A DNA stretch of 17,483 bases from Chlorokybus atmophyticus (Eukaryota > Plantae > Mesostigma and Chlorokybus algae), in the NCBI GenBank assembly GCA_009103225.1, contig RHPI01002849.1, positions 1 to 17,483 on the forward strand, read 5' to 3'. A program made the position numbers and the translations under genes. Of the stretch, positions 1-11,357 are shown piece by piece (positions within the stretch are counted from its first letter, which is position 1; each line of letters begins with the position of its first letter). The notes beneath the pieces were generated by a model. It searched no databases and was not told the origin of the DNA. It worked only from the letters and a program-made list of their open reading frames with translations.

Positions 1-1395
1 GCATGAGGCCGTTGGATCAAAGCCCCCAATATCTGGACCGTCCAACCCACATCCCCACAATAATAAGCAGCTCAAATATGCATAAAAATATGCAAAATGA
101 GCACAACAACATGCACAGTGTCACTCACACGCGCATGCACATATACAAGCAGAACACTTGTCACAAAGGACTTGTATTAGAAGGGGTGCAACTTGAGCAA
201 CTGCTTAAAGCACGAAATGAAATGGAAATGAGACTGCCTTTTATGCTATGCCTATCACTGATATAAAAAGGCTAAATGGCTGTTAACTGCATGAAGGAAA
301 TAAAGATAACTAGGAAACGTGGCTATAAAGTAAATGCATTCCAATGCATAAAGGAGCAAATTAGGAAGAAGGTCCATATACTTCCCCGTTAATTGGTGTG
401 CTAGGGGGTAAGACCCGGCGCCTAGCCCCTGAGGGTAAGTCTCCAACGCTTCCAGTGGGGCGCGGCTTGATATAGAGGCTTTAAGGGACCTACATAGGCA
501 GTAGGTCAGATATCTACAGTGTGGGGCCATTACCTCGGTTAGTCCACTAGTTAGGCACTCACAATAGGCACCAAACTACAACAAACTCCACGCGAGGGCT
601 GAATTTGCCTCTATTGTCGGAGGACCTTGTGCCATCTGTGTCCACCCCAACATCGCAGCCACGACTGTTATTGCTCGCTCCATGAGTGCCACCATGATGG
701 CCTGCGCACGCTGCAGAGGGTGCGTAGGCCATGGCACACATGGAGCGATGACACAGCATAGCACACCATGCACAATCATGCAGTGCACTGCAATATACAA
801 CCACAATGGAAAGACTCAGGCACACTACACTACAACAAGCACAACGCAAACAGCAAAAGCTTAGCGGTGGTGCCAGGGAGCACGCGGTGGGACTCAAGGA
901 GGGTTGCGGCAGCAAGTTGGCATTAGGCGGTTACAGCAGTAGTGTTGGCGGCTGCAGCCGTGTAGTTATGTAGGCGTGCTTGCACGCTGCTTGCGTGCGT
1001 GTGAGTATGCTTGTGCAGTGTGATAGGCATGGATGACAGTACGTGGCTTTGTAACGATGTTGATGCTGTACTAGTGATGAGAAGTAGTAGTGCGCTGAGC
1101 CCCTTAGCAACACGGAGAATGGCAAGGTAGGGGCAACCACAGCTCTTCACCTACACAGAAACTCTATGGTGATGTACAAATGATTGGAACATATTGCCAA
1201 ATAAGATGGTACTCATGAGCTTTGGTCACTTGGAAATACAGCACGTGCCCGGCAATGCCACGGCAATACAGCCAAAACCAGTGGAATGACTTCAGGCATA
1301 ATGCACGTTACGCACAAGCAGCTAGTGCAGTATTGGAAACGGGGCTGTGGAAGCATCTTGTGGCATGTATTGTGATGCAGCCAGCAGCAATCGAG

Positions 1396-4300
1396 CTACC
1401 TTGTCCTGCGTTTCGGGTACTTGTTTTGCCGAGACTTGGCTGCTTTGGCTGCTTTGTCCCGGCCTTTATGACTGCCAGACTTGGACCCAGTGTCGCTGCC
1501 ACTGCCATCCACATCATTGCTTGCGTGTTCCGCACTGCTCGCGCGCCGACTTGCTGTGCACTCAAAATCCCATAGCCGGCAAGGCGCATTTCTGCAGCCA
1601 GCAAGGAGTGCCGAGCCATGAACCTAAGAATAACGATGGACATAGGCATATGTAAAGATACTACACCATACGGATCCGCTATGATCAAGGCGTGCATGTC
1701 TGCAATACGGTTTAATGTGGCCCATGCGTGCAGGCCTTACGTGTGTACAAGCAGACACCACACATCGCCTACCTGGAAACAATTGACAGCGGTGTCAGCG
1801 TTGAGGCGCAAAAATGGGCGATGCCAAAGGACGCCATTGGCAGCAGGTGCACTGCGCACATCGTAGCACAACATCTCGCAGCTGCCACCCGAAAACACAA
1901 GCTTCCAATCGTCCAGCTGCACGCCCGCCGCCGCTCCATCATAGCCCGCCTCCATCGCACAGCACAGAACCGGCTGTTGACAGCCATGCCTCAAGTCCCA
2001 AAGCTGGATGCACCCAACCGATGAAGCTGCTAGCAGCCTGCATAGAGAAGACCTATTGCTCAGAACTGTGCCGGTCTGATGCAACATATACTGGCCCAAA
2101 CACAACCACAGCTTCTGGTAAGTGAGTACCTTCCAGAGGGGTCCCAGTTGAGCGCATTGCATAGCACACCACCTGCAAAGATGCACCCACAATTGTATGA
2201 CACGCCTCTTTGCGAATCGTCAACATCAAGTTGACAGAATGCTGTCCTTCTCACACAGCACCTGGTAGCATGTTGATGCAAGTGGCACTACTCGTGTCCC
2301 AAACACTGACTCCGTGCTCGCTGCCGCAATATAGCTGCTGTCGCTGCGTGTCCATGCAGATGGCGTGCAGTGGGCAGCCGACATTAAGCGACACTATCGG
2401 GGCGGACGAAGTCGTGTCCCAAATGTTCAGGTGTCCATCACTCGAGGCGGAGATGGGCGTTTCCGAGTGGAAAAGGCATGCTGTGATGCTGCCGGTGTGC
2501 CCGCGCAGCATGCGCACGCACTTGAGGTCGTCCAGCGACCACCAACGCAGCGTGCCTCCCGCACATCCCGACAGCAGATGAGAGTCGTCATATGCCAAGC
2601 AGGTCACATCTGCCTGGTGCCCCTGCATAAGACATCATGGAATTGCTTTCGATCGTCAAGAGCCTGCTAACAGCAACACATAATATTGCTATCCCAAACT
2701 TCCAAACTGTCGCACGAGGTTGTTTGATGTGGAAGCATGGTTGCCAATAATCTCAAAGCAATCGTCAACAACTCACAGCTTTCAATGACGACAATGTCCA
2801 GAGTTGAGGCAATGTCCCAAGCTGCTGCATGAAACGACTTCACAGGCACTCAAGACATGTCAACACAGCACGTGCACGCATACCTGTAGTATGCCAAGGC
2901 CGCGCTCAGAACCGAGGGACCAAACCCGTAGCAGTTTTCCCTGAGCGCAGTAAACGTTGTTGCCGTCGACTTGCAGGCACGAAGCATTATGACCAAGTTG
3001 GGCGCCCACATCATGCGCAGAGAATGCTCCTCGCTTCCATGGCCAGGCTCTCAACTCGCTGCGCCTGCAAAGGCGCCGACAGGCTGCAGGTGTCATGCCA
3101 GCTGGAGGTTCGGCTCCGAAAAGCCTTTCATGGTGGTTAGACCACAAGCTTGCTGTACCAGTCATTCGGCTGAAGTCTTGGTTCGCTCGAGCCACGGAGC
3201 ACAAGTCCCGCACGGACAGGTGCTCCAGGACCTGCAAATGCGCAAAGACTGCTCAAGACAGAACAAACAGAGCACAGTCAGCACGCAGATCAAACATGCC
3301 ACATCGGGCTTTGGCCATGTAGCATAGCCACATAGCATAGCAATGCGTTAGGCAATGCTCATAATGACGCACACAAGAAACAAGTCAACATGGATGGGCT
3401 CCTAGTATTACGAATATAGAGAATACGCTAGCATGCTCATGTCCTGAAGCAGCATGTTTGCGACTGGTAATGAAGGCTGGAGCCAACCATGCACGGATAA
3501 GCAACATGACATGCACTATAACCACCCATCGACGAAAGCGAGCGTGTACTGCTTACCATATTGTTGTGACTGTTTCATTGTTTGTAACAAGAGCATACCT
3601 GTAGCCACAGAAGGTCTGGCAGAGTCTCTGCGTGGCACGGATATGGCTTTGCTTCTTGTGCAGCTCCATCTGATGTCTCATTGGCCTCCTCGCTTGCAGT
3701 GCGTTCAGCGGGTGGTGTGTTGAGCATGGAGGCTAGGTTGTTTCTCGAGCGTGCGCGCGCTTCCCACAGCATGACACCTGTGTCCGCATTCTTGAAGTAG
3801 CGAATGCGGTGGTAAGGCACATCCGCATCCGGCCGGCTTGCAAACTCCTCAAACGGTGTCTCCTTCACGCTACTGTGAATCCGAGTGCTCCAGGCCGCTG
3901 CACCGCTCTTGCGGTGAAGCTCCGCAGACTCGCTCAACCAACCAATCTGTTTTGTGTTGTTGTTACAGCAAGGCAATGTATGTGTGGCGCTTATGCTGCA
4001 CACCACACTGCCCATGCAGTCTTACATTGAACGCTTACCACAGCACCTTACATGTTGCTATGCAGGCACGATGTTGAACTACACAACTGCCATGCATAGC
4101 CAAGATCTGCTTGGAAAACACTGCTGTGGTTATGAGCCAAACGCAGCTTTCGTATTGCAGTGCGGTGCGTCATAGCTACACATGCAATTGATCCGTGCAA
4201 CCGTGGCACACCAGCAGCGCTCGCGAGCTGCACCTTTGAGCTTCTTCACTGACATGCAAGTGTACATCAAGACTAACAGCGTGGATTCCTCGCAAAGAGC

Positions 4301-4627
4301 ATTGTGCAGCCATCACTGGCGTGTCCAGAGCTGTGAAGCGACCAATCAGCCCCATCCTCAGTGGAGCATGCTTGAACGCACCAAAAAGCGCGAAGAGGCG
4401 AGTTCAGGGTCCCACCGCAGGCGAGCGAACACCTTCTTGGCGCGGGCGGCGAGGGCCAGCATGTCTGGGACCACCTCCTCCGCGGGGAGGAGCGGGCCGC
4501 CCCATGCGGACGGCGACGGGCTCGGCACGGGGCTTGCGCCATCGCAGGCGGTCGTCGTAGACATCCGCCTGGGCCGTGGCGCCGGCACCGCCACGGCCGC
4601 AGAGACACCGCCACCGCCGCCCTCCAT
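1396..4627 (-). CDS. MJ1316(DUF504)-like domain + F-box + WD40-repeat protein, 7 exons, ~612 aa
   Basis: Exons (minus): 4627-4382, 3946-3599, 3231-2884, 2622-2262, 2172-2130, 2037-1773, 1623-1396. All introns are GT-AG with consistent phases; total 1839 nt. MJ1316-like: AKKVFARLRWDPELASSRFL|IGW...VKETPFEEF...DVPYHRIRYFKNADTGVMLWEAR. F-box: LPDLLWLQ|VLEHLSVRDLCSVARANQDFSRMTGTASLW. WD repeats include GHQADVTCLAYDDSHLLSGCAGGTLRWWS and GHTGSITACLFHSETPISASSDGHLNIWD. C-terminus is KYPKRRTR*. The start is uncertain because the frame stays open upstream of ATG 4627. Confidence 0.88.
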
Positions 4628-5560
4628 GGCGGAGCAGCCAAGTACCTGTCCAGGTAAATGCTTAGCTAGAACGCTGCTAACATGAGGCGTTTGTGGCAGC
4701 GCTCTGCTGGAGCCAAGAGACGAGCTGTGGGTGGCTCTGTCTGCTGCCGTTTGTTTCGTACAGCATCCGTTCCTGCCAAGGACTGCCTGGTGTAAGAATC
4801 TGTAAGGAATCGTCGGTAGGTGAGGAATCCTCTCAAACGAGGCACGGAATCGGCCCTCCTGCATAAAACGTGTAAGGATAAACCTGATAGACAAGAGCGC
4901 AACAGGCAAGTGTACTAAAGGTGTACATCAAATGCAAGACATGCATGCGCATGCACAACGTGTAGTCAAGTCAGCACGCAGCAACACATGCAAGGTACAT
5001 CAAACGAAATTCAGTTGACCACCGGGCTACTACTAGCACGCTAATCTACCGCCTCTACCCCGTTAGACATGCAGCAGTCAACATGCAGTTGGTAATCACC
5101 TGCCCACATGGGTGTTGTATTGCACTGTTATGGACATGCATGTATCTAATAAGCTGCATAGCGGTATAGCGGATGGGGCCATGCACATACATATAGGGGT
5201 GTGTGGATTTATAAGCGTGGTGCCTGCTATCTGCTGGTGCTGAGTGCATGCATGGCCTGCTACTTACTGCACGTTGTGTTGCGTGCCAAGCATTGCATAT
5301 CTGTGCATGAAGTGCTGATTGACTTATACGCTATATACAAGTTGCACATGTTGTAAAACGCTTGTCGATGGCTCATACATTATATGGCATGCAACAGCCC
5401 CGTAGCGCCGACGCTGTAGTCAACCACAGAGGGGTAGGCAGGCCACTCTTTACTGCACTGACCAAAAGTCTTCCAGTGGCTCACACTATGAACAGACATG
5501 CGTAGATACCGATGACATGGCAAGCAACTATGAAACACAACAAGCATAAATTCACAAACC

Positions 5561-5769: not shown

Positions 5770-5924
5770 GCTGCATGTATGCGTCGCACAGGCTATACCA
5801 ATTCAACATTCGAAAAGGCTAATGCACATCTGTGTCCATCTTGTAAGCTGTATGCCGGTTGTCGGTGACTGGTAGATGGAGTTGGAGGTGAAATCACAGC
5901 CAGTAACACCTTCCTACTTTGTTC

Positions 5925-6110
5925 TACGCTATACGTTGTGACAACCTGTATTGAAGTAGCAACGCACCATCACCTCCACATTGCCCACATTGCCCTTGTG
6001 CATGACAATACTCTACAGCACCTGCAGTAAAGGATACATCAGCTGACGGAGTGCAATATCTCATGGCTGGTTTTTGCAAAACTGAACTTGCGACAGCGCA
6101 GGATATCAAA
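5925..6110 (+). mobile_element. Possible degenerate non-LTR retrotransposon relic (zinc-knuckle region downstream of RT)
   Basis: Across stops and a frameshift: IRCDNLY*SSNAPSPPHCPHCP / HDNTLQHLQ*RIHQLTECNISWLVFAK. This loosely resembles the CPxC...H...C...ERHN arrangement of algal LINE ORF2 tails. Resemblance from memory only. Confidence 0.22.
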
Positions 6111-6364
6111 TGCGTATCAGCGTTTGTATACCAACAGAGTCCTGCCAACTGCAATACAGCAACACAACTATCTAAATGGCGACAGCTCACCCTTGCGTTT
6201 GTCACACAGTGGGCAGAGCTGTATGGCGTGACTTGTGCATCATGGTCAACAGGAGCTGCACGGGACATCCGTGTGCAAGATCTGACGGGCAGATGCAACA
6301 GCCACAACACTGCATGGACTATTGTATGCAGGTTCACCCTCACCCTTCCAGCAAGCAAACCATT

Positions 6365-9300
6365 TCATGCGAGCGTTTGCTTCTTGCCTTTTCCCTTTGC
6401 GTCAATCTGCGCACAATTGAGCGTTTTGGCAATCCTCAATCTGTGACGGTATTGTTAGCAACAACGACAACTGCCACAACTCAACAACAGCCAACCGATC
6501 GCAAAATGCAAATATGTACCCAAACCCTCGGTTACATACTTTATCAGCTGTGCCCTTGCGGCCTGTAACGAATTCATCGTAAATGGCATCAAGCCGCGCG
6601 CGCTCCCCTGCGGTAACAGAAGGGCGCAAAGCAGTAGCAGCGGAGCGAAGGTGTGCCATGGTCAGCAACACATTCTCGGCGCCAGCATCAGGGTCATCCG
6701 GATGCTGTTCAAGATAATCGTGCACAGCGCCAAGTTGCGCATCACTCAACAACGCTTGCAGGTCCGCACCACTGAAGCCGTCCGCGCGCCTGGCGATGTC
6801 CTTCCAGCTGACCTCTTCAGCAACGCGCAGCTTGCGCCCGAGAGATGCAAGTATTTGTTCCCGTTCAAGCACGGAGGGAAACCCGCAGAACACAAGCCGG
6901 TCTAGACGTCCGGGGCGCAGCAATGCAGCATCTATCAAATCTGGCCGGCTGCAAAACGCAAAAACCGGTCACAAGACGGAGACATAACAAACATCGAGCT
7001 CTAGTAGACCAGTACAACATGCCAGAGGCCATTGCCAATGCATTGAGAATAGGCGACACCAATGGAAATGCAACTACGTTGCATGGACCGGACTGGTGTT
7101 GTACCTGGTAGCTGCAAGCACAAAGACGTTCTCAAGCTTTTCAACACCATCAAGTTCCGTCAAGAGCTGGTTGACCACACGATCAGTAACCCCAGTATTG
7201 TCATGCCCACGCTTGGGGGCAATTGCATCAAACTCATCGAAAAACAGTATGCATGGCGCCGCTGCTGCCGCTCGCTTGAAGGTATCTCGCACTGCCTGTT
7301 CGCTAGCGCCTATGTATTTGTTGAGCAGCTCCGGTCCCTGTGGAAGGAAAACAAAGCCTGTGTACACACTGCGCAACCATCCTATTTATCGCTGTAACCT
7401 ACATGCATACCTTCACGCCAATAAAGCGCAGGCTGCAAGCTGCCGCAGCAACCCCAACGATATGAGTCTTTCCACAACCCGGCGGTCCAAACAGCAAGAT
7501 GCCAGATCGCAGGCGCAATGGAGCCATTGCAAAAAGCGACGCATGTCGAGACGGTAACTCTAGTGTCTCTTGCAGTACTTGGCGGACATCCTGCAAACCT
7601 CCAACATCTTCCCAAGTCAAGTGCTGTTCGCTAGCGGCTTGCACGCTGCCAGCAGCTTGCAAAGACCCGGGCACGAGCCCTTTGCTGGCAACGGTGAAGT
7701 CCTCGTCCAGCACTTCCAACTTGGGTATCACACGTTGCTTGCTGGATGGTACTAAGTGGAGGTGCAGCGCTTGAGCTGCACGGGACAGATAGCGTGTTGA
7801 GGCTGAGTGGACAGCGCGCTCCAATAGCAATGCCTGCACATGCACTGATGAGTATAAAACCAATTGAAGCAACAAACGTTGAATGATAGTGCATTGGCTC
7901 ACCATGTCAGCAGCATCATATGCGTCTGCGCGAGCGCTAGCAGCTGCAATGACTTGAGTGCTGCATGCCACTCCTCTTGCCGCGACAGCTGCAGCAAGGA
8001 TTGATGTACGATCCCCACTGGTGGGAGGTGGCAGCTCCACCTCGAAGTCAAGTCTACCTTCCATGACAAGCAGTGCACAAGTCAACAAGCTGGGTGAGTT
8101 GTATAGCCAATGTACCCCGCACCCAACACAGACTGTTCAGACGCATTCTCGGCTGTGGGCTTATGTCATAAAGTTTTAGGTCAACAGCTTGCAGATGTGC
8201 AAAGCTTACCTGCCACACGCAATGACTGTGCCAGGGCATCAGGTGCGCGACTGGTGGCCAAGTAAACTATGGGGCACGCGTCCAACATTGAACGCTGACA
8301 GTTATCCATCAGTTCGCATAGATACCCAGACAAAGCTGCATTGCTTTCTGAGGCCGCACCACCTTCGCTTGCAGGCAGGATGGCGTCCAAATCATCAAGA
8401 ATAACAACGGAAGGAGCGTAATCAACGGCTTCTTGCACTATCCTTTTTAACGATTCTTCCAGCTTCTCCGGTTGCTCGCCGACAAGTTCATTGCAGCGCA
8501 ACACCACACTGCACAACCATTGCTCAGCATGTTTCTATTGGCTAGGATTCCAACAACTGCATGTCGAGCATGAGTACCGTGACAATCACTATACCTGTGG
8601 CATAAACTCTGCTGGTTGCGCTGGAAGTGCCTTGCAAGTGCTGCTGCCACAGCTGATTTGCCACAACCTTGGGGTCCATGCAACAGCAGGCCCCCGGAGG
8701 CTGGAGTTTGCAGCCTGCACAGCTGAGCTTGACCTCCTCGCGTCAGAGCTGGAATCAATCCTGCATCACATGTAACACACTCAGAGCTGCAATAATGAAG
8801 CAAAGACACTGGCCACTGTACTGTGCTTCTCACGTGTCAACGCAGTTCTGATGGGTGTTGAAAACCATTGCAGTTGTTCAAGCTCCTGGCCCTCAATCAC
8901 ATTCTCGCTGAGCTTTGGGCAGGACAGCGGTGCTCCTAGGCTGACACTCAACTTACGATTGGTTGAGGATTGTTGTTGCAGGTCGTGCAGCAAAGCACGA
9001 TCAATGACATAGTATACTAGCAGACCTGTGAGTCACAGCCAAAGTCATGACCCATTACGAGATGCACAAGTAGAGCCAAGGTACAATTGTCGCTGATGAA
9101 AGCAATATAAGTACCAGTTTCCGAGTCTGTACTCGTACTGTCCTCTTGAATGGACTTCACGACGTCAAAGCGAAACAATGCCGACCTGACGTTCTCTATT
9201 TCATCTTCTCCTGTCGCCGCCAGTTTGATGAAACTGCCGCAGGCCAGAGGAACGCCATTGCAATGGTCGGAATAGCCTTGATGGCCGTCCAACCAAGCGG

Positions 9301-10933
9301 CTAACAATTGAACTACATACGTTGTCTCAGAGGAACTGGCAGCAGCCTGAAGCTCATGATGAAGGCTGTGCACAGCGCAGTCTTTGTCTGCTTGGAGATT
9401 GACGGGTAGTACACTGAGTGGCGGCAGCACACTTGGACCGTGAGTGCATTTTGTTACTTGCACACCTGCAACAATTATGGTGAATAACACGGCTCAAGTT
9501 AGACAAAAGTTAAAAGGTACACCAAGGCAAACCGTGCACTCACGTGAGAAGACCCTCGCAAAAAGCTGCTGCCGCAATGCGCTTGAGAGCATCACATGAT
9601 CTGGCGCTACATCGGGGCGAGATGCTAGACGCACTGGAAAACAAGGTTGAACACTGCCCGCCTGCGCATCACCCTTGCCATCTTGTTCACGTAGGGTTTT
9701 GTCCTCCAACACTTGCTTTTTCTTGGCCCGTGATAATGGCCTCAGCAGAAGCAAGTCACCATCAGCATACCCACAGCGCGATGCAGTGTCCGTTGACACA
9801 AAGACGACTGCAGATGGCGACAACCAGCAGCTGATGTTGGCAAAGGCGACGGGGGTGAGGTGCTCAGAGCTAAGAACTTGGACTCGCCAGATATGGCGCT
9901 TCACACGGTCTGGTGTACGCTTCGGCACTTTAACGCGCGGTGCTGAGGGAAGTTCACGCAGCTTTGGGGCCACAAACAACTCTGTGCCAGCAGTAAGCCG
10001 AACCTGTTGTTAGCGACGACGCACGCTCAGCACAATCACATAAACCCATTGCACTCGTTTGGAACAATGAAGCAACATTCCGCTGCTCATCATGTTAGTG
10101 GTGCATATGCATGCTTGCATGGGAGGTTCAACAGCAGCAAGCGGCCTGCTCACCAATCTGCTTGGTGATGTTGATACTGCTCGCAAGTAAAGCACGGCTT
10201 GATTGCGAATCCAAGCAGGGAACTCTTGACCTTCTCTAAGAACACCCACCTGAGCAATGCATGCAATGAGCAACAGTTGGCGACATGAATTCCTCATGCA
10301 AGCTTGGTGCATGCGTTGCATGCTGCTAGTGCTAGAGCGATCGCAGCGACAGCAAAGCCACTTGTTAGTCACCTGGATGAGCAACTGCTCTTCTAGATAA
10401 GCTGCATTAACCTCCAAGATCTCCCAGTCATCAGACGAAGCAGGTTCGACTCCAACGCTGGTGGCGGCAGGAACGTCTGCACGTAGCTTCACGCGCACTG
10501 GGCAACTGTCCTCAAGTCCTATGCATGACGCAAGTGCAGCTGGCACCTGCAATTTGCCATGTGCAACAGCTGAATTGTGCTTGATGCAGGCAAACACAAA
10601 CATTCAAACATCACAGCATGAAGACAGAACAGGACGGGCAGCAGCATTGGGCGGAAAGGTCAGTTGAACACCCAAGCACGCGTTAGTGATTATAACAACC
10701 AGCTGAAATGGCACCTCAAGGTGTTGTCCTGAAGATGAAGCGCCAGCCCATGCAACGTCCCATGTTCTCGGACCAGATTCTGATATTTGTGCGTTGCGAG
10801 AGCGGGACAGGCTGAGCTGCAGGACCACAGGCAGCTGCGGACCGCTGCCGTCATGCAGCAGAGCGCTTATGACCCCCGCCGGCAGCGCCACGAAGCAGCT
10901 AGCCTCCCGCACCAGCTGCACCACGAGCTCCAT
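6365..10933 (-). CDS. PEX1: Peroxisome biogenesis AAA+ ATPase PEX1, 13 exons, ~1069 aa
   Basis: Exons (minus): 10933-10715, 10546-10373, 10249-10154, 10003-9544, 9465-9115, 9016-8834, 8760-8595, 8508-8210, 8057-7903, 7833-7411, 7337-7105, 6948-6540, 6406-6365 (3210 nt). PEX1 N-domain motifs: [49 protein letters not shown]1: GPQGCGKS and VILDDLD. D2: [81 protein letters not shown]. Plant-type C-terminus [10 protein letters not shown]. Mid-gene exon boundaries (8760-9465) are less certain. Confidence 0.95.
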
Positions 10934-11357
10934 GACACCAGCCAGGCCCTGGCTGGTCGCGTCCAACACCGCCGCCGCCGCCGCCGCCGCAGCGGCAGAG
11001 GCCGGGCATATGATGACTTGATCTCCACACTCAAATCAACTGCGTATAAGCATACAAACCCCATTTCAGTCGCGAACGGGTCAACATGTAGCCATGATGT
11101 AGGTACCCATCACGTACAACACGTGTCACAGATGGTTATGTACCGTACATGGCTTACATTGTTGTCCGCGGCTGTTACATGTACATGTACACAGCCGCGT
11201 CACCACACTAATACTATTTATTATTATTGCTTACAATATGCTTACACCAAAGTGTGCAACGCGTTGCCGACGGCTTGCCGTTGATGCGCTCCGATGTTTG
11301 GCTGCAGTGGTTGTCCATGTTGGGGTGCACGTAGCTGGTGGTGCTGGTGGCGGCAGC
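10934..11357. promoter_or_regulatory. Short head-to-head intergenic region (putative bidirectional promoter) between PEX1 and the LysM-channel gene
   Basis: The two inferred ATGs (10933 minus, 11358 plus) are separated by 424 nt. GC-rich flanks surround an AT-richer core (TATTTATTATTATT near 11215-11228). Transcription start sites are not determinable. Confidence 0.55.
10969..10990. repeat. (CCG)7 trinucleotide microsatellite upstream of the PEX1 ATG
   Basis: CCGCCGCCGCCGCCGCCGCCGC read directly. Confidence 0.9.

What the first reader, a model, noticed from the sequence alone, without database searches (positions are those of the whole stretch)
1396..4627. MJ1316/DUF504 RNA-end-recognition-like domain fused to an F-box/WD40 E3 adaptor
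Seen: RLRWDP...FL|IGW and E.PFEEF...VPYHRIRYFK...G..LW are the hallmark blocks of MJ1316. The second half of the domain and the start of the F-box (LPDLLWLQ) lie in one uninterrupted exon (3946-3599), so the fusion does not depend on a doubtful splice. Established: MJ1316 (PF04457; also in LENG9) is predicted to recognise RNA cyclic-phosphate ends and is usually linked to RNA repair/processing enzymes; F-box/WD40 proteins are SCF substrate receptors. Inference: this protein may couple detection of cleaved RNA or RNPs to ubiquitination. I am not aware of this architecture being described.
Basis: partly seen in the sequence, partly recalled or inferred. Interest (0 to 1): 0.82.

Follow-up and report, generated by a model that had tools for sequence, protein, structure and literature searches.

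The report
Algal ubiquitin-ligase adaptor with RNA-end domain
This green-alga gene really does join a domain predicted to read cut RNA ends to a standard ubiquitin-ligase adaptor. The same untested combination is already present, machine-annotated, in about fifteen named green-algal species.

Summary
Window 1396-4627 (minus strand) is a seven-exon gene for a 612-aa protein. All introns are GT..AG, and every splice junction appears in transcript contigs from two independent studies. One contig spans exons 1 to 3, so the fusion is transcribed as one RNA.

The spliced protein is identical to the public Chlorokybus atmophyticus gene model. It passes Pfam's curated cut-offs for MJ1316 (37.9 vs 26.3 bits), F-box-like (25.1 vs 24.3) and WD40. 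A confident model of the N-terminal domain matches only MJ1316 clusters in the ESM Atlas. The remainder aligns best with Skp1-bound beta-TrCP, FBXW7 and Cdc4.

The architecture is not unique. The same domain order occurs in about 15 named green-algal species, some carrying automatic database names such as "F-box domain-containing protein". I found no paper that describes or tests it.

Two family-specific features are new here:
- An invariant beta-hairpin, R-x-S-G-x-x-A-W-S-x-R, inserted in the MJ1316 domain.
- A basic peptide, [RK][YF]PKR-x-T-[KR], fixed at the C-terminus.

The function (an SCF receptor steered or regulated by an RNA-end or phosphate ligand) is inferred. MJ1316's RNA-end role is itself only a published prediction.

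The parts
4382..4627 (-). Coding exon 1 (aa 1-82). It holds a low-complexity N-terminus, then the first MJ1316 half (helix plus 'RLRWDP', from about 4441 down). The ATG is at 4627; an alternative in-frame ATG lies at 4564.
   Evidence: GT donor at 4381; contigs X1 rec 4 and X2 rec 6 end at 4382 and join 3946; MJ1316 profile 4-24; identical to P0001.
3947..4381 (-). Intron 1 (435 nt, GT..AG, phase 0), which splits the MJ1316 domain. A low-depth unspliced contig covers 4046-4411.
   Evidence: joint 3946/4382 in X1 and X2; X1 record 3 unspliced at depth 11.9 vs 236.9.
3599..3946 (-). Coding exon 2 (aa 83-198). It holds the second MJ1316 half (3946-3764), a disordered linker, and the first 8 residues of the F-box (3622-3599).
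   Evidence: AF2 pLDDT is below 50 for residues 148-188.
3881..3913 (-). Family-specific beta-hairpin motif R94-K-S96-G97-A-A-A100-W101-S102-T-R104, inserted in the MJ1316 domain.
   Evidence: 100% conserved in 31 family sequences and absent from the canonical MJ1316 protein P0020. It lies at the tip of a long hairpin in the AF2 model.
3803..3811 (-). Canonical MJ1316 'HRI' block (H128-R129-I130, within 'VPYHRIRYFK').
   Evidence: H conserved at 94%, R at 87% in the family.
2884..3231 (-). Coding exon 3 (aa 199-314). It holds the rest of the F-box (3231-3130), linker helices including the 'CRRSELRAWPW' block, and the first WD40 blade.
2262..2622 (-). Coding exon 4 (aa 315-435), carrying WD40 blades.
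   Evidence: WD40 53 bits; joints 2621/2883 and 2169/2259.
2130..2172 (-). Coding exon 5, a 43-nt microexon inside the propeller.
   Evidence: joints in both X1 and X2; AG/GT flanks.
1773..2037 (-). Coding exon 6 (aa 450-537), carrying WD40 blades including the 'GVQLDDWKLV' block.
1396..1623 (-). Coding exon 7 (aa 538-612) plus the stop codon (1398-1396). It holds the last blade, a helix, a Lys-rich disordered tail, and the terminal peptide K-Y-P-K-R-R-T-R (1422-1399).
   Evidence: In 22 of 25 full-length or near-full-length family proteins scanned, the tail motif [RK][YF]PKR ends 1-3 residues (8 in one) from the C-terminus. pLDDT is below 50.
1167..1395 (-). 3' untranslated region covered by transcript contigs.
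   Evidence: X2 record 5 reaches 1167; X1 record 1 covers 1048-1429.

Best explanation
This is an expressed Chlorokybus atmophyticus gene for a 612-aa member of a conserved green-algal protein family.

Fixed module order:
1. A disordered N-terminus.
2. An MJ1316-type domain carrying an extra invariant beta-hairpin.
3. A disordered linker.
4. An F-box and helical linker.
5. A seven-bladed WD40 propeller.
6. A basic tail ending in [RK][YF]PKR-x-T-[KR].

Shown here: the gene model, its transcription as one spliced RNA, the three domain identities, and conservation of the whole arrangement across green algae.

Inferred mechanism:
- The F-box docks the protein on Skp1-Cul1-Rbx1, as in beta-TrCP, FBXW7 and Cdc4.
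- The propeller holds a protein substrate.
- The MJ1316-type domain binds an RNA terminus or another phosphate-bearing ligand. 2',3'-cyclic phosphate is the published prediction for this domain family.
- That binding either brings the ligase to cleaved RNA or ribonucleoprotein, or gates its activity.
- The basic tail probably provides nuclear or nucleolar targeting, or additional contact with RNA.
For: Gene and transcript:
- Spliced contigs from two studies cover every junction, and one contig spans exons 1-3.
- The model is identical to the public protein P0001.

Domains:
- MJ1316 scores 37.9 bits against a 26.3 cut-off, F-box-like 25.1 against 24.3, and WD40 56.7 against 27.
- The AF2 model of residues 50-152 has mean pLDDT 87.4.
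- All ten of its top ESM Atlas fold matches are clusters in which 95-100% of members carry PF04457 (TM by query 0.50-0.60, 60-71 residues aligned, rmsd 2.0-2.5 A).
- The full-length model shows 29 strands, i.e. seven blades, mostly at pLDDT above 90.
- Its best PDB matches are Skp1-bound beta-TrCP1/FBXW11 (E 1e-23, about 400 aligned columns covering the whole 402-residue chain), then FBXW7 and Cdc4.
- Sequence search gives the same order: beta-TrCP 1e-39, FBXW7 1e-28.

Conservation:
- The same architecture occurs in Dunaliella, Monoraphidium, Tetradesmus, Scenedesmus, Enallax, three Volvox species, Pleodorina, Tetrabaena, Chlamydomonas eustigma and Cymbomonas. Haematococcus (its database model lacks the MJ1316 motifs) and Pyramimonas (a 152-aa fragment) are partial members.
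- L191-P192 of the F-box are nearly invariant and W196 invariant.
- In the N-domain, R94, S96, G97, A100, W101, S102 and R104 are 100% conserved; H128 is 94% and R129 87%.
- The known partners of MJ1316 in the Atlas clusters are RNA-end enzymes: poly(A) polymerase, 2H/AKAP7-like phosphoesterase and 2'-5' RNA ligase.
Against: - No experiment shows what any MJ1316 domain binds. No solved structure exists, by sequence or by fold.
- In this family the first canonical motif is relaxed (W becomes Y/F, and D is variable).
- The most constrained element is a family-specific hairpin rather than the canonical H-R pair. The ligand may therefore differ from that of other MJ1316 domains.
- In two intron-poor picoalgal relatives the hairpin is absent and the H-R pair is degenerate ('YHAIRRI', 'YQSMHHI'), yet the rest of the protein is kept.
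- The F-box score is only just above Pfam's cut-off.
- Skp1 binding and the substrate are untested.
Confidence: 0.5

Rival explanations
1. This is a conventional beta-TrCP/Cdc4-like SCF receptor for phosphorylated proteins. Its MJ1316-derived domain has been re-purposed and no longer touches RNA. It could be a protein-protein or small-ligand module, or a regulatory module whose invariant R-x-S hairpin is a kinase site.
For: - The hairpin R-[KR]-S-G..A-W-S.R is more conserved than the canonical H-R pair and is absent from the canonical MJ1316 protein P0020.
- The first canonical motif is relaxed.
- Picoalgal relatives keep the protein while the H-R pair decays.
- Tetrabaena's copy is auto-named Cdc4.
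- The nearest clusters by language-model features are plain plant F-box/WD40 proteins.
Against: - The domain still passes the MJ1316 gathering score.
- It superposes on MJ1316 models from RNA-end enzymes.
- H128, R129 and W143 remain 87-94% conserved in the main family.
Confidence: 0.3
2. This is an RNA-processing or ribonucleoprotein scaffold rather than a ubiquitin-ligase subunit. The F-box would bind Skp1 without a cullin, or have lost Skp1 binding. The propeller and basic tail would hold RNA or RNP partners in the nucleus or nucleolus.
For: - The F-box-like score is marginal (25.1 vs 24.3), and some members fall below the cut-off.
- There is a strongly conserved Lys/Arg tail at the exact C-terminus.
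- From general knowledge, F-box proteins that act outside SCF complexes are known in yeast.
Against: - The F-box L-P pair is nearly invariant and W196 invariant across the family.
- Foldseek aligns the whole F-box, linker and propeller to Skp1-bound beta-TrCP, FBXW7 and Cdc4 chains.
Confidence: 0.15
3. The fusion is an artefact: two neighbouring genes merged by the reader or by a gene caller.
For: None found. A low-depth contig retains intron 1.
Against: - One transcript contig spans exons 1-3, and another spans exons 2-7.
- There are in-frame GT..AG junctions throughout.
- The same domain order occurs in more than 15 species.
Confidence: 0.02

Closest known systems
beta-TrCP1/FBXW11, FBXW7 and yeast Cdc4 (F-box/WD40 substrate receptors of SCF ubiquitin ligases)
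   Same: Both have an F-box, a helical linker and a WD40 propeller. These are the best PDB matches by sequence (1e-39 and 1e-28) and by fold (E 1e-23 to 1e-20, alignments covering the whole Skp1-bound chain). The first blade carries a 'CLQxD..K/N.V' block like that of beta-TrCP (the beta-TrCP comparison is from my own knowledge).
   Different: - There is an N-terminal MJ1316-type domain.
- No helical dimerisation domain lies just before the F-box; residues 148-188 are disordered and unconserved.
- There is a conserved C-terminal basic peptide.
- The propeller has seven blades, as in beta-TrCP; FBXW7 and Cdc4 have eight (my own knowledge).
- Sequence identity is only 16-19%.
- Phosphodegron-contact residues were not compared.
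Other MJ1316 (PF04457) proteins: LENG9 (CCCH + 2H/AKAP7-like + MJ1316), fungal and bacterial poly(A)-polymerase-family + MJ1316, 2'-5' RNA ligase + MJ1316
   Same: They share the same small domain, by Pfam score and by predicted fold (TM 0.50-0.60 over 60-71 residues). The 'HRI.YFK ... W' block is retained.
   Different: - In those proteins the partner domains are RNA-end enzymes. Here the partner is a ubiquitin-ligase adaptor.
- This family has an inserted, invariant hairpin of about 11 residues and a relaxed first motif.
- None of the ten Atlas clusters carries an F-box.
Land-plant F-box/WD40 proteins such as At5g21040-type
   Same: They are the nearest Atlas clusters by language-model features for the Volvox orthologue (scores 0.92-0.93).
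   Different: Those clusters list no MJ1316 domain. Orthology was not tested, and no land-plant protein appeared among the named hits of the MJ1316-exon searches.

Membership tests
MJ1316 domain (Pfam PF04457) | Profile score above Pfam's gathering cut-off over most of the 75-position model | tested here: met
   37.9 bits against a 26.3 cut-off, residues 63-143 matching profile 4-73 of 75. The two exon halves score 14.2 and 23.1 bits separately.
MJ1316 domain (Pfam PF04457) | Hallmark blocks: R-x-W-D near the start, then P-x-H-R-I-x-Y-F-K and a terminal W | tested here: met
   'RLRWDP', 'VPYHRIRYFK' and W143 are present. Across the family the first block is relaxed, while H, R and W are 87-94% conserved.
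MJ1316 domain (Pfam PF04457) | Same fold as other members | tested here: met
   The AF2 model (pLDDT 87.4) was searched against the ESM Atlas. All ten listed rows are clusters in which 95-100% of members carry PF04457 (TM by query 0.50-0.60, rmsd 2.0-2.5 A). Both sides are predictions, and no experimental MJ1316 structure was found.
MJ1316 domain (Pfam PF04457) | Recognition of RNA 2',3'-cyclic phosphate ends | not testable with these tools
   This is a prediction in the literature (PMC6514570 quoting Burroughs & Aravind 2016). I found no experimental paper.
F-box/WD40 SCF substrate receptors | F-box motif with the Skp1-contacting L-P start | tested here: met
   F-box-like scores 25.1 bits against a 24.3 cut-off, residues 189-232. 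L191 and P192 are invariant or nearly so, and W196 is invariant, across up to 25 members. The margin over the cut-off is small.
F-box/WD40 SCF substrate receptors | WD40 beta-propeller directly after the F-box and a helical linker | tested here: met
   There are helices at 193-264, then 29 strands from 269 to 556, which makes seven blades. Foldseek's best matches are Skp1-bound beta-TrCP, FBXW7 and Cdc4.
F-box/WD40 SCF substrate receptors | Binding to Skp1/Cul1 and substrate ubiquitination | not testable with these tools
   Requires co-immunoprecipitation and in-vitro ubiquitination.
beta-TrCP/FBXW7/Cdc4 subfamily | Helical dimerisation (D) domain immediately N-terminal to the F-box | tested here: not met
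   Residues 148-188 have pLDDT below 50 and no secondary structure, and they are unalignable across the family. That such a domain defines the subfamily is my own knowledge.
beta-TrCP/FBXW7/Cdc4 subfamily | Arginine pocket on the propeller's top face for phosphodegrons | not tested
   The tools return no model coordinates, and no reference sequences with residue numbering were at hand.

The most novel reading that the evidence does not exclude
Green algae keep an SCF ubiquitin-ligase receptor that reads a damaged or cleaved RNA terminus directly through its MJ1316-plus-hairpin domain. It would thereby ubiquitinate proteins sitting on the cleaved RNA, such as stalled ribosomes, cleaved tRNA or rRNA particles, or RNA-repair factors. 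That would be an RNA-end-gated E3 adaptor, ancestral to Viridiplantae and apparently lost in land plants.
Probability: 0.25. Interest if true: 0.8.

Novelty: new variant of a known kind. Interest (0 to 1): 0.5.

Why it matters
If the N-domain binds RNA ends, this family would link RNA cleavage directly to protein ubiquitination within a single polypeptide. It would also give a genetically tractable way to test what MJ1316 domains do, since orthologues exist in Volvox and in relatives of Chlamydomonas, and no MJ1316 function has yet been shown experimentally. The invariant hairpin and the C-terminal peptide are precise, mutable handles for such tests. If the domain does not bind RNA, the family is still a lineage-specific F-box/WD40 receptor, one of the few in the green lineage, with an unusual regulatory module.

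Tried and rejected
- PDB sequence searches with exon 2, with the family N-domain profile and with a canonical MJ1316 protein found nothing relevant.
- Foldseek and VIA-align searches of the N-domain model against the PDB gave only noise: best E 0.4 and best Z 4.4. A comparison with an experimental MJ1316 structure is therefore impossible.
- NCBIfam gave only a sub-threshold archaeal hit of 17 bits.
- The word-indexed homologue search with the Chlorokybus protein (region 50-240) found only itself.
- The full-length family profile was swamped by unrelated WD40 proteins and added only three members.
- The third search, with the more consensus-like P0016, gave the named species.
- Burroughs & Aravind 2016 could not be opened by DOI or PMC id. 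I therefore cannot say whether that paper lists this architecture.
- Literature searches for MJ1316, DUF504, PF04457, the Pfam name and LENG9 found no functional study.
- The gene-fusion-artefact reading is rejected.
- Dinoflagellate membership (Polykrikos, Prorocentrum) is doubtful. A Prorocentrum sequence shares a 90% identity cluster with a Pyramimonas sequence, which suggests transcriptome cross-contamination.
Full report
**What is in the window**

On the minus strand between 4627 and 1396 lies a seven-exon gene. I placed candidate splice sites by reading the open frames. I then joined the exons as 4627-4382, 3946-3599, 3231-2884, 2622-2262, 2172-2130, 2037-1773 and 1623-1399. Every intron is GT..AG, and the joined frame gives 612 residues ending at the stop codon 1398-1396.

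**Transcription**

The run search found three holders of the stretch in two studies. Two of them (X1, X2) each hold about half of the sampled words, as expected if they contain exons only.

- Laying their contigs on 1000-5400 showed all six joints, each with CT..AC ends on the plus strand, in both X1 and X2.
- X2 record 6 runs 4522-4382 | 3946-3597 | 3229-3048. One contig therefore joins the first MJ1316 half, the second half with the F-box start, and the remainder of the F-box.
- X1 record 2 continues from 3946 to 1400.
- The 43-nt microexon is present in both runs.
- A low-depth contig retains intron 1 (4046-4411).
- X1 differs from the window by a few single bases and by an in-frame GCT insertion behind 4498, consistent with another strain or allele.
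- Contigs cannot show the transcript's 5' end. Coverage does reach 4557, which is upstream of the 'RLRWDP' block (about 4408).

**Identity of the protein**

An exhaustive phmmer search with exon 2 against 1.84 billion cluster representatives returned a 612-aa protein, P0001, 100% identical over residues 83-198.

- P0001 equals my spliced translation letter for letter.
- It is the EukProt/JGI gene model of Chlorokybus atmophyticus, an early-branching streptophyte alga.
- The gene is therefore already predicted in public data.

**Domains**

- On single exons, Pfam's MJ1316 profile is split exactly at intron 1: profile 4-24 in exon 1 and 27-73 in exon 2. Both halves are below the cut-off on their own.
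- On the spliced protein MJ1316 scores 37.9 bits (cut-off 26.3, residues 63-143), F-box-like 25.1 (cut-off 24.3, residues 189-232) and WD40 56.7 (cut-off 27).
- An AlphaFold2 model of residues 50-152, built on 32 family sequences, has mean pLDDT 87.4. It shows a helix, a long beta-hairpin, a short helix and two further strands.
- No solved structure resembles it, by sequence or by fold.
- In the ESM Atlas, all ten listed matches are clusters in which 95-100% of members carry PF04457. They include LENG9, poly(A)-polymerase-family proteins, 2H/AKAP7-like proteins and 2'-5' RNA ligase proteins (TM by query 0.50-0.60, 60-71 aligned residues, rmsd 2.0-2.5 A).
- The full-length model (mean pLDDT 77.0) has three confident modules. 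These are the MJ1316 domain (53-147), the F-box with linker helices (189-264), and 29 strands forming seven blades (269-556). They are separated by disordered stretches at 1-52, 148-188 and 572-606.
- Its best PDB matches are Skp1-bound beta-TrCP1/FBXW11, then FBXW7 and Cdc4, with alignments covering the whole target chain. Sequence search gives the same order.

**The family**

Almost all 33 significant hits of the exhaustive search are the same kind of protein or fragments of it. The one clear exception, P0020, is a canonical MJ1316 protein.

With the word-indexed search seeded from P0016, and with the cluster look-ups, the named members are:
- Chlorophyceae: Dunaliella salina, Monoraphidium minutum, Tetradesmus obliquus, Scenedesmus sp., Enallax costatus, Flechtneria rotunda, Volvox carteri, V. 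africanus, V. reticuliferus, Pleodorina starrii, Tetrabaena socialis, Chlamydomonas eustigma and Haematococcus lacustris.
- Prasinophytes: Cymbomonas tetramitiformis and Pyramimonas sp..

Their precomputed Pfam lists mostly hold PF04457 and WD40 families, with PF12937 in about half; the Haematococcus and Monoraphidium lists lack PF04457. Several carry automatic names. The architecture spans the chlorophyte/streptophyte split, so it is probably ancestral to green algae.

No land-plant protein appeared among the named hits, but many fragments are unnamed and this is not proof of absence. Two dinoflagellate entries are doubtful because one shares a 90% cluster with a Pyramimonas sequence.

**Family-specific features**

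- Compared with the canonical MJ1316 protein P0020, the family has an insertion of about 11 residues, R-[KR]-S-G-x-x-A-W-S-x-R.
- All seven named positions of that motif are 100% conserved in 31 sequences. That exceeds the canonical H128 (94%) and R129 (87%).
- The motif sits at the tip of the long hairpin.
- The first canonical block is relaxed, with W replaced by Y or F.
- After the F-box comes a conserved 'CRRSELRAARWLEA' helix.
- In 22 of 25 full-length or near-full-length members the motif [RK][YF]PKR ends one to three residues (eight in one) before the C-terminus, preceded by a lysine-rich stretch.

**A variant branch**

Two GC-rich, intron-poor eukaryotic contigs from JGI metagenomes encode relatives that the gene caller started too late.

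- Reading upstream shows the first MJ1316 half ('ARRAFARIKF...') in another frame.
- A GTGCG donor and a CAG acceptor join it to the called ORF.
- The intron lies at the same point in the domain as intron 1 here.
- These copies lack the hairpin and have a degenerate H-R pair, yet they keep the F-box, the propeller and the C-terminal peptide.
- Many database fragments that begin '...LQVG' are also best read as ORFs starting in that same intron.

**Interpretation**

The parts shown are the gene, its expression, the three domains and their conservation. The mechanism is inferred from the families:
- An F-box with the L-P start docks on Skp1 (established for beta-TrCP, FBXW7 and Cdc4).
- A WD40 propeller presents a substrate.
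- The MJ1316-type domain adds a second recognition surface.

The published view is that MJ1316 recognises RNA 2',3'-cyclic ends and is fused to RNA-repair domains. That view is a computational prediction (PMC6514570). I could not open the primary paper and found no experimental work.

The hairpin being more constrained than the canonical pair, and the decay of that pair in one branch, keep open the possibility that the domain has another ligand here.

**Verdict**

It is a conserved but uncharacterised green-algal family already present in public databases, not a unique architecture. Its proposed role in coupling RNA ends to ubiquitination is reasonable but unproven.

Noticed in passing
window 1399-1422 (minus strand); family proteins P0007, P0016, P0124 and others: A peptide [RK][YF]PKR-x-T-[KR] sits at the exact C-terminus in 22 of 25 full-length or near-full-length family members, after a Lys-rich stretch. 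It is predicted to be disordered. Its role is unexplained; it might be a nuclear-import signal, a docking peptide or an RNA contact.
   Followed up: partly
window 3947-4381 (intron 1); L003:4990-5160 and L001:5930-6060: The phase-0 intron that splits the MJ1316 domain lies at the same point in two otherwise intron-poor picoalgal relatives. It probably lies there in many other algae too, since database fragments begin '...LQVG'.
   Followed up: partly
L001:5800-7659 and L003:4880-6734: Metagenomic picoalgal orthologues lack the RxSG..AWS hairpin and have a degenerate H-R pair ('YHAIRRI', 'YQSMHHI'). They keep the F-box, the propeller and the C-terminal peptide. Their public gene calls omit the first exon.
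   Followed up: partly
window about 5900-10970, minus strand: The upstream neighbour looks like a large protein with two AAA-type ATPase domains (motifs such as 'GPPGCGKT'), possibly PEX1- or p97-like. Transcript contigs at 4822-5117 with loose ends are probably its 3' part.
   Followed up: no
window 4498 and seven single-base sites between 1079 and 3166: Run X1 carries an in-frame GCT insertion and several base differences relative to the window, while run X2 matches the window. This points to strain or allele variation.
   Followed up: no
window 2637-2863: A low-depth contig of run X3 replaces 225 bases of intron 3 with 211 other letters (TG..CA ends). It may come from a paralogue, a variant allele or an assembly artefact.
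   Followed up: no
proteins P0024 (Pyramimonas) and P0135 (Prorocentrum): Sequences labelled as a green alga and as a dinoflagellate fall in one 90% identity cluster. This suggests cross-contamination between public transcriptomes.
   Followed up: no
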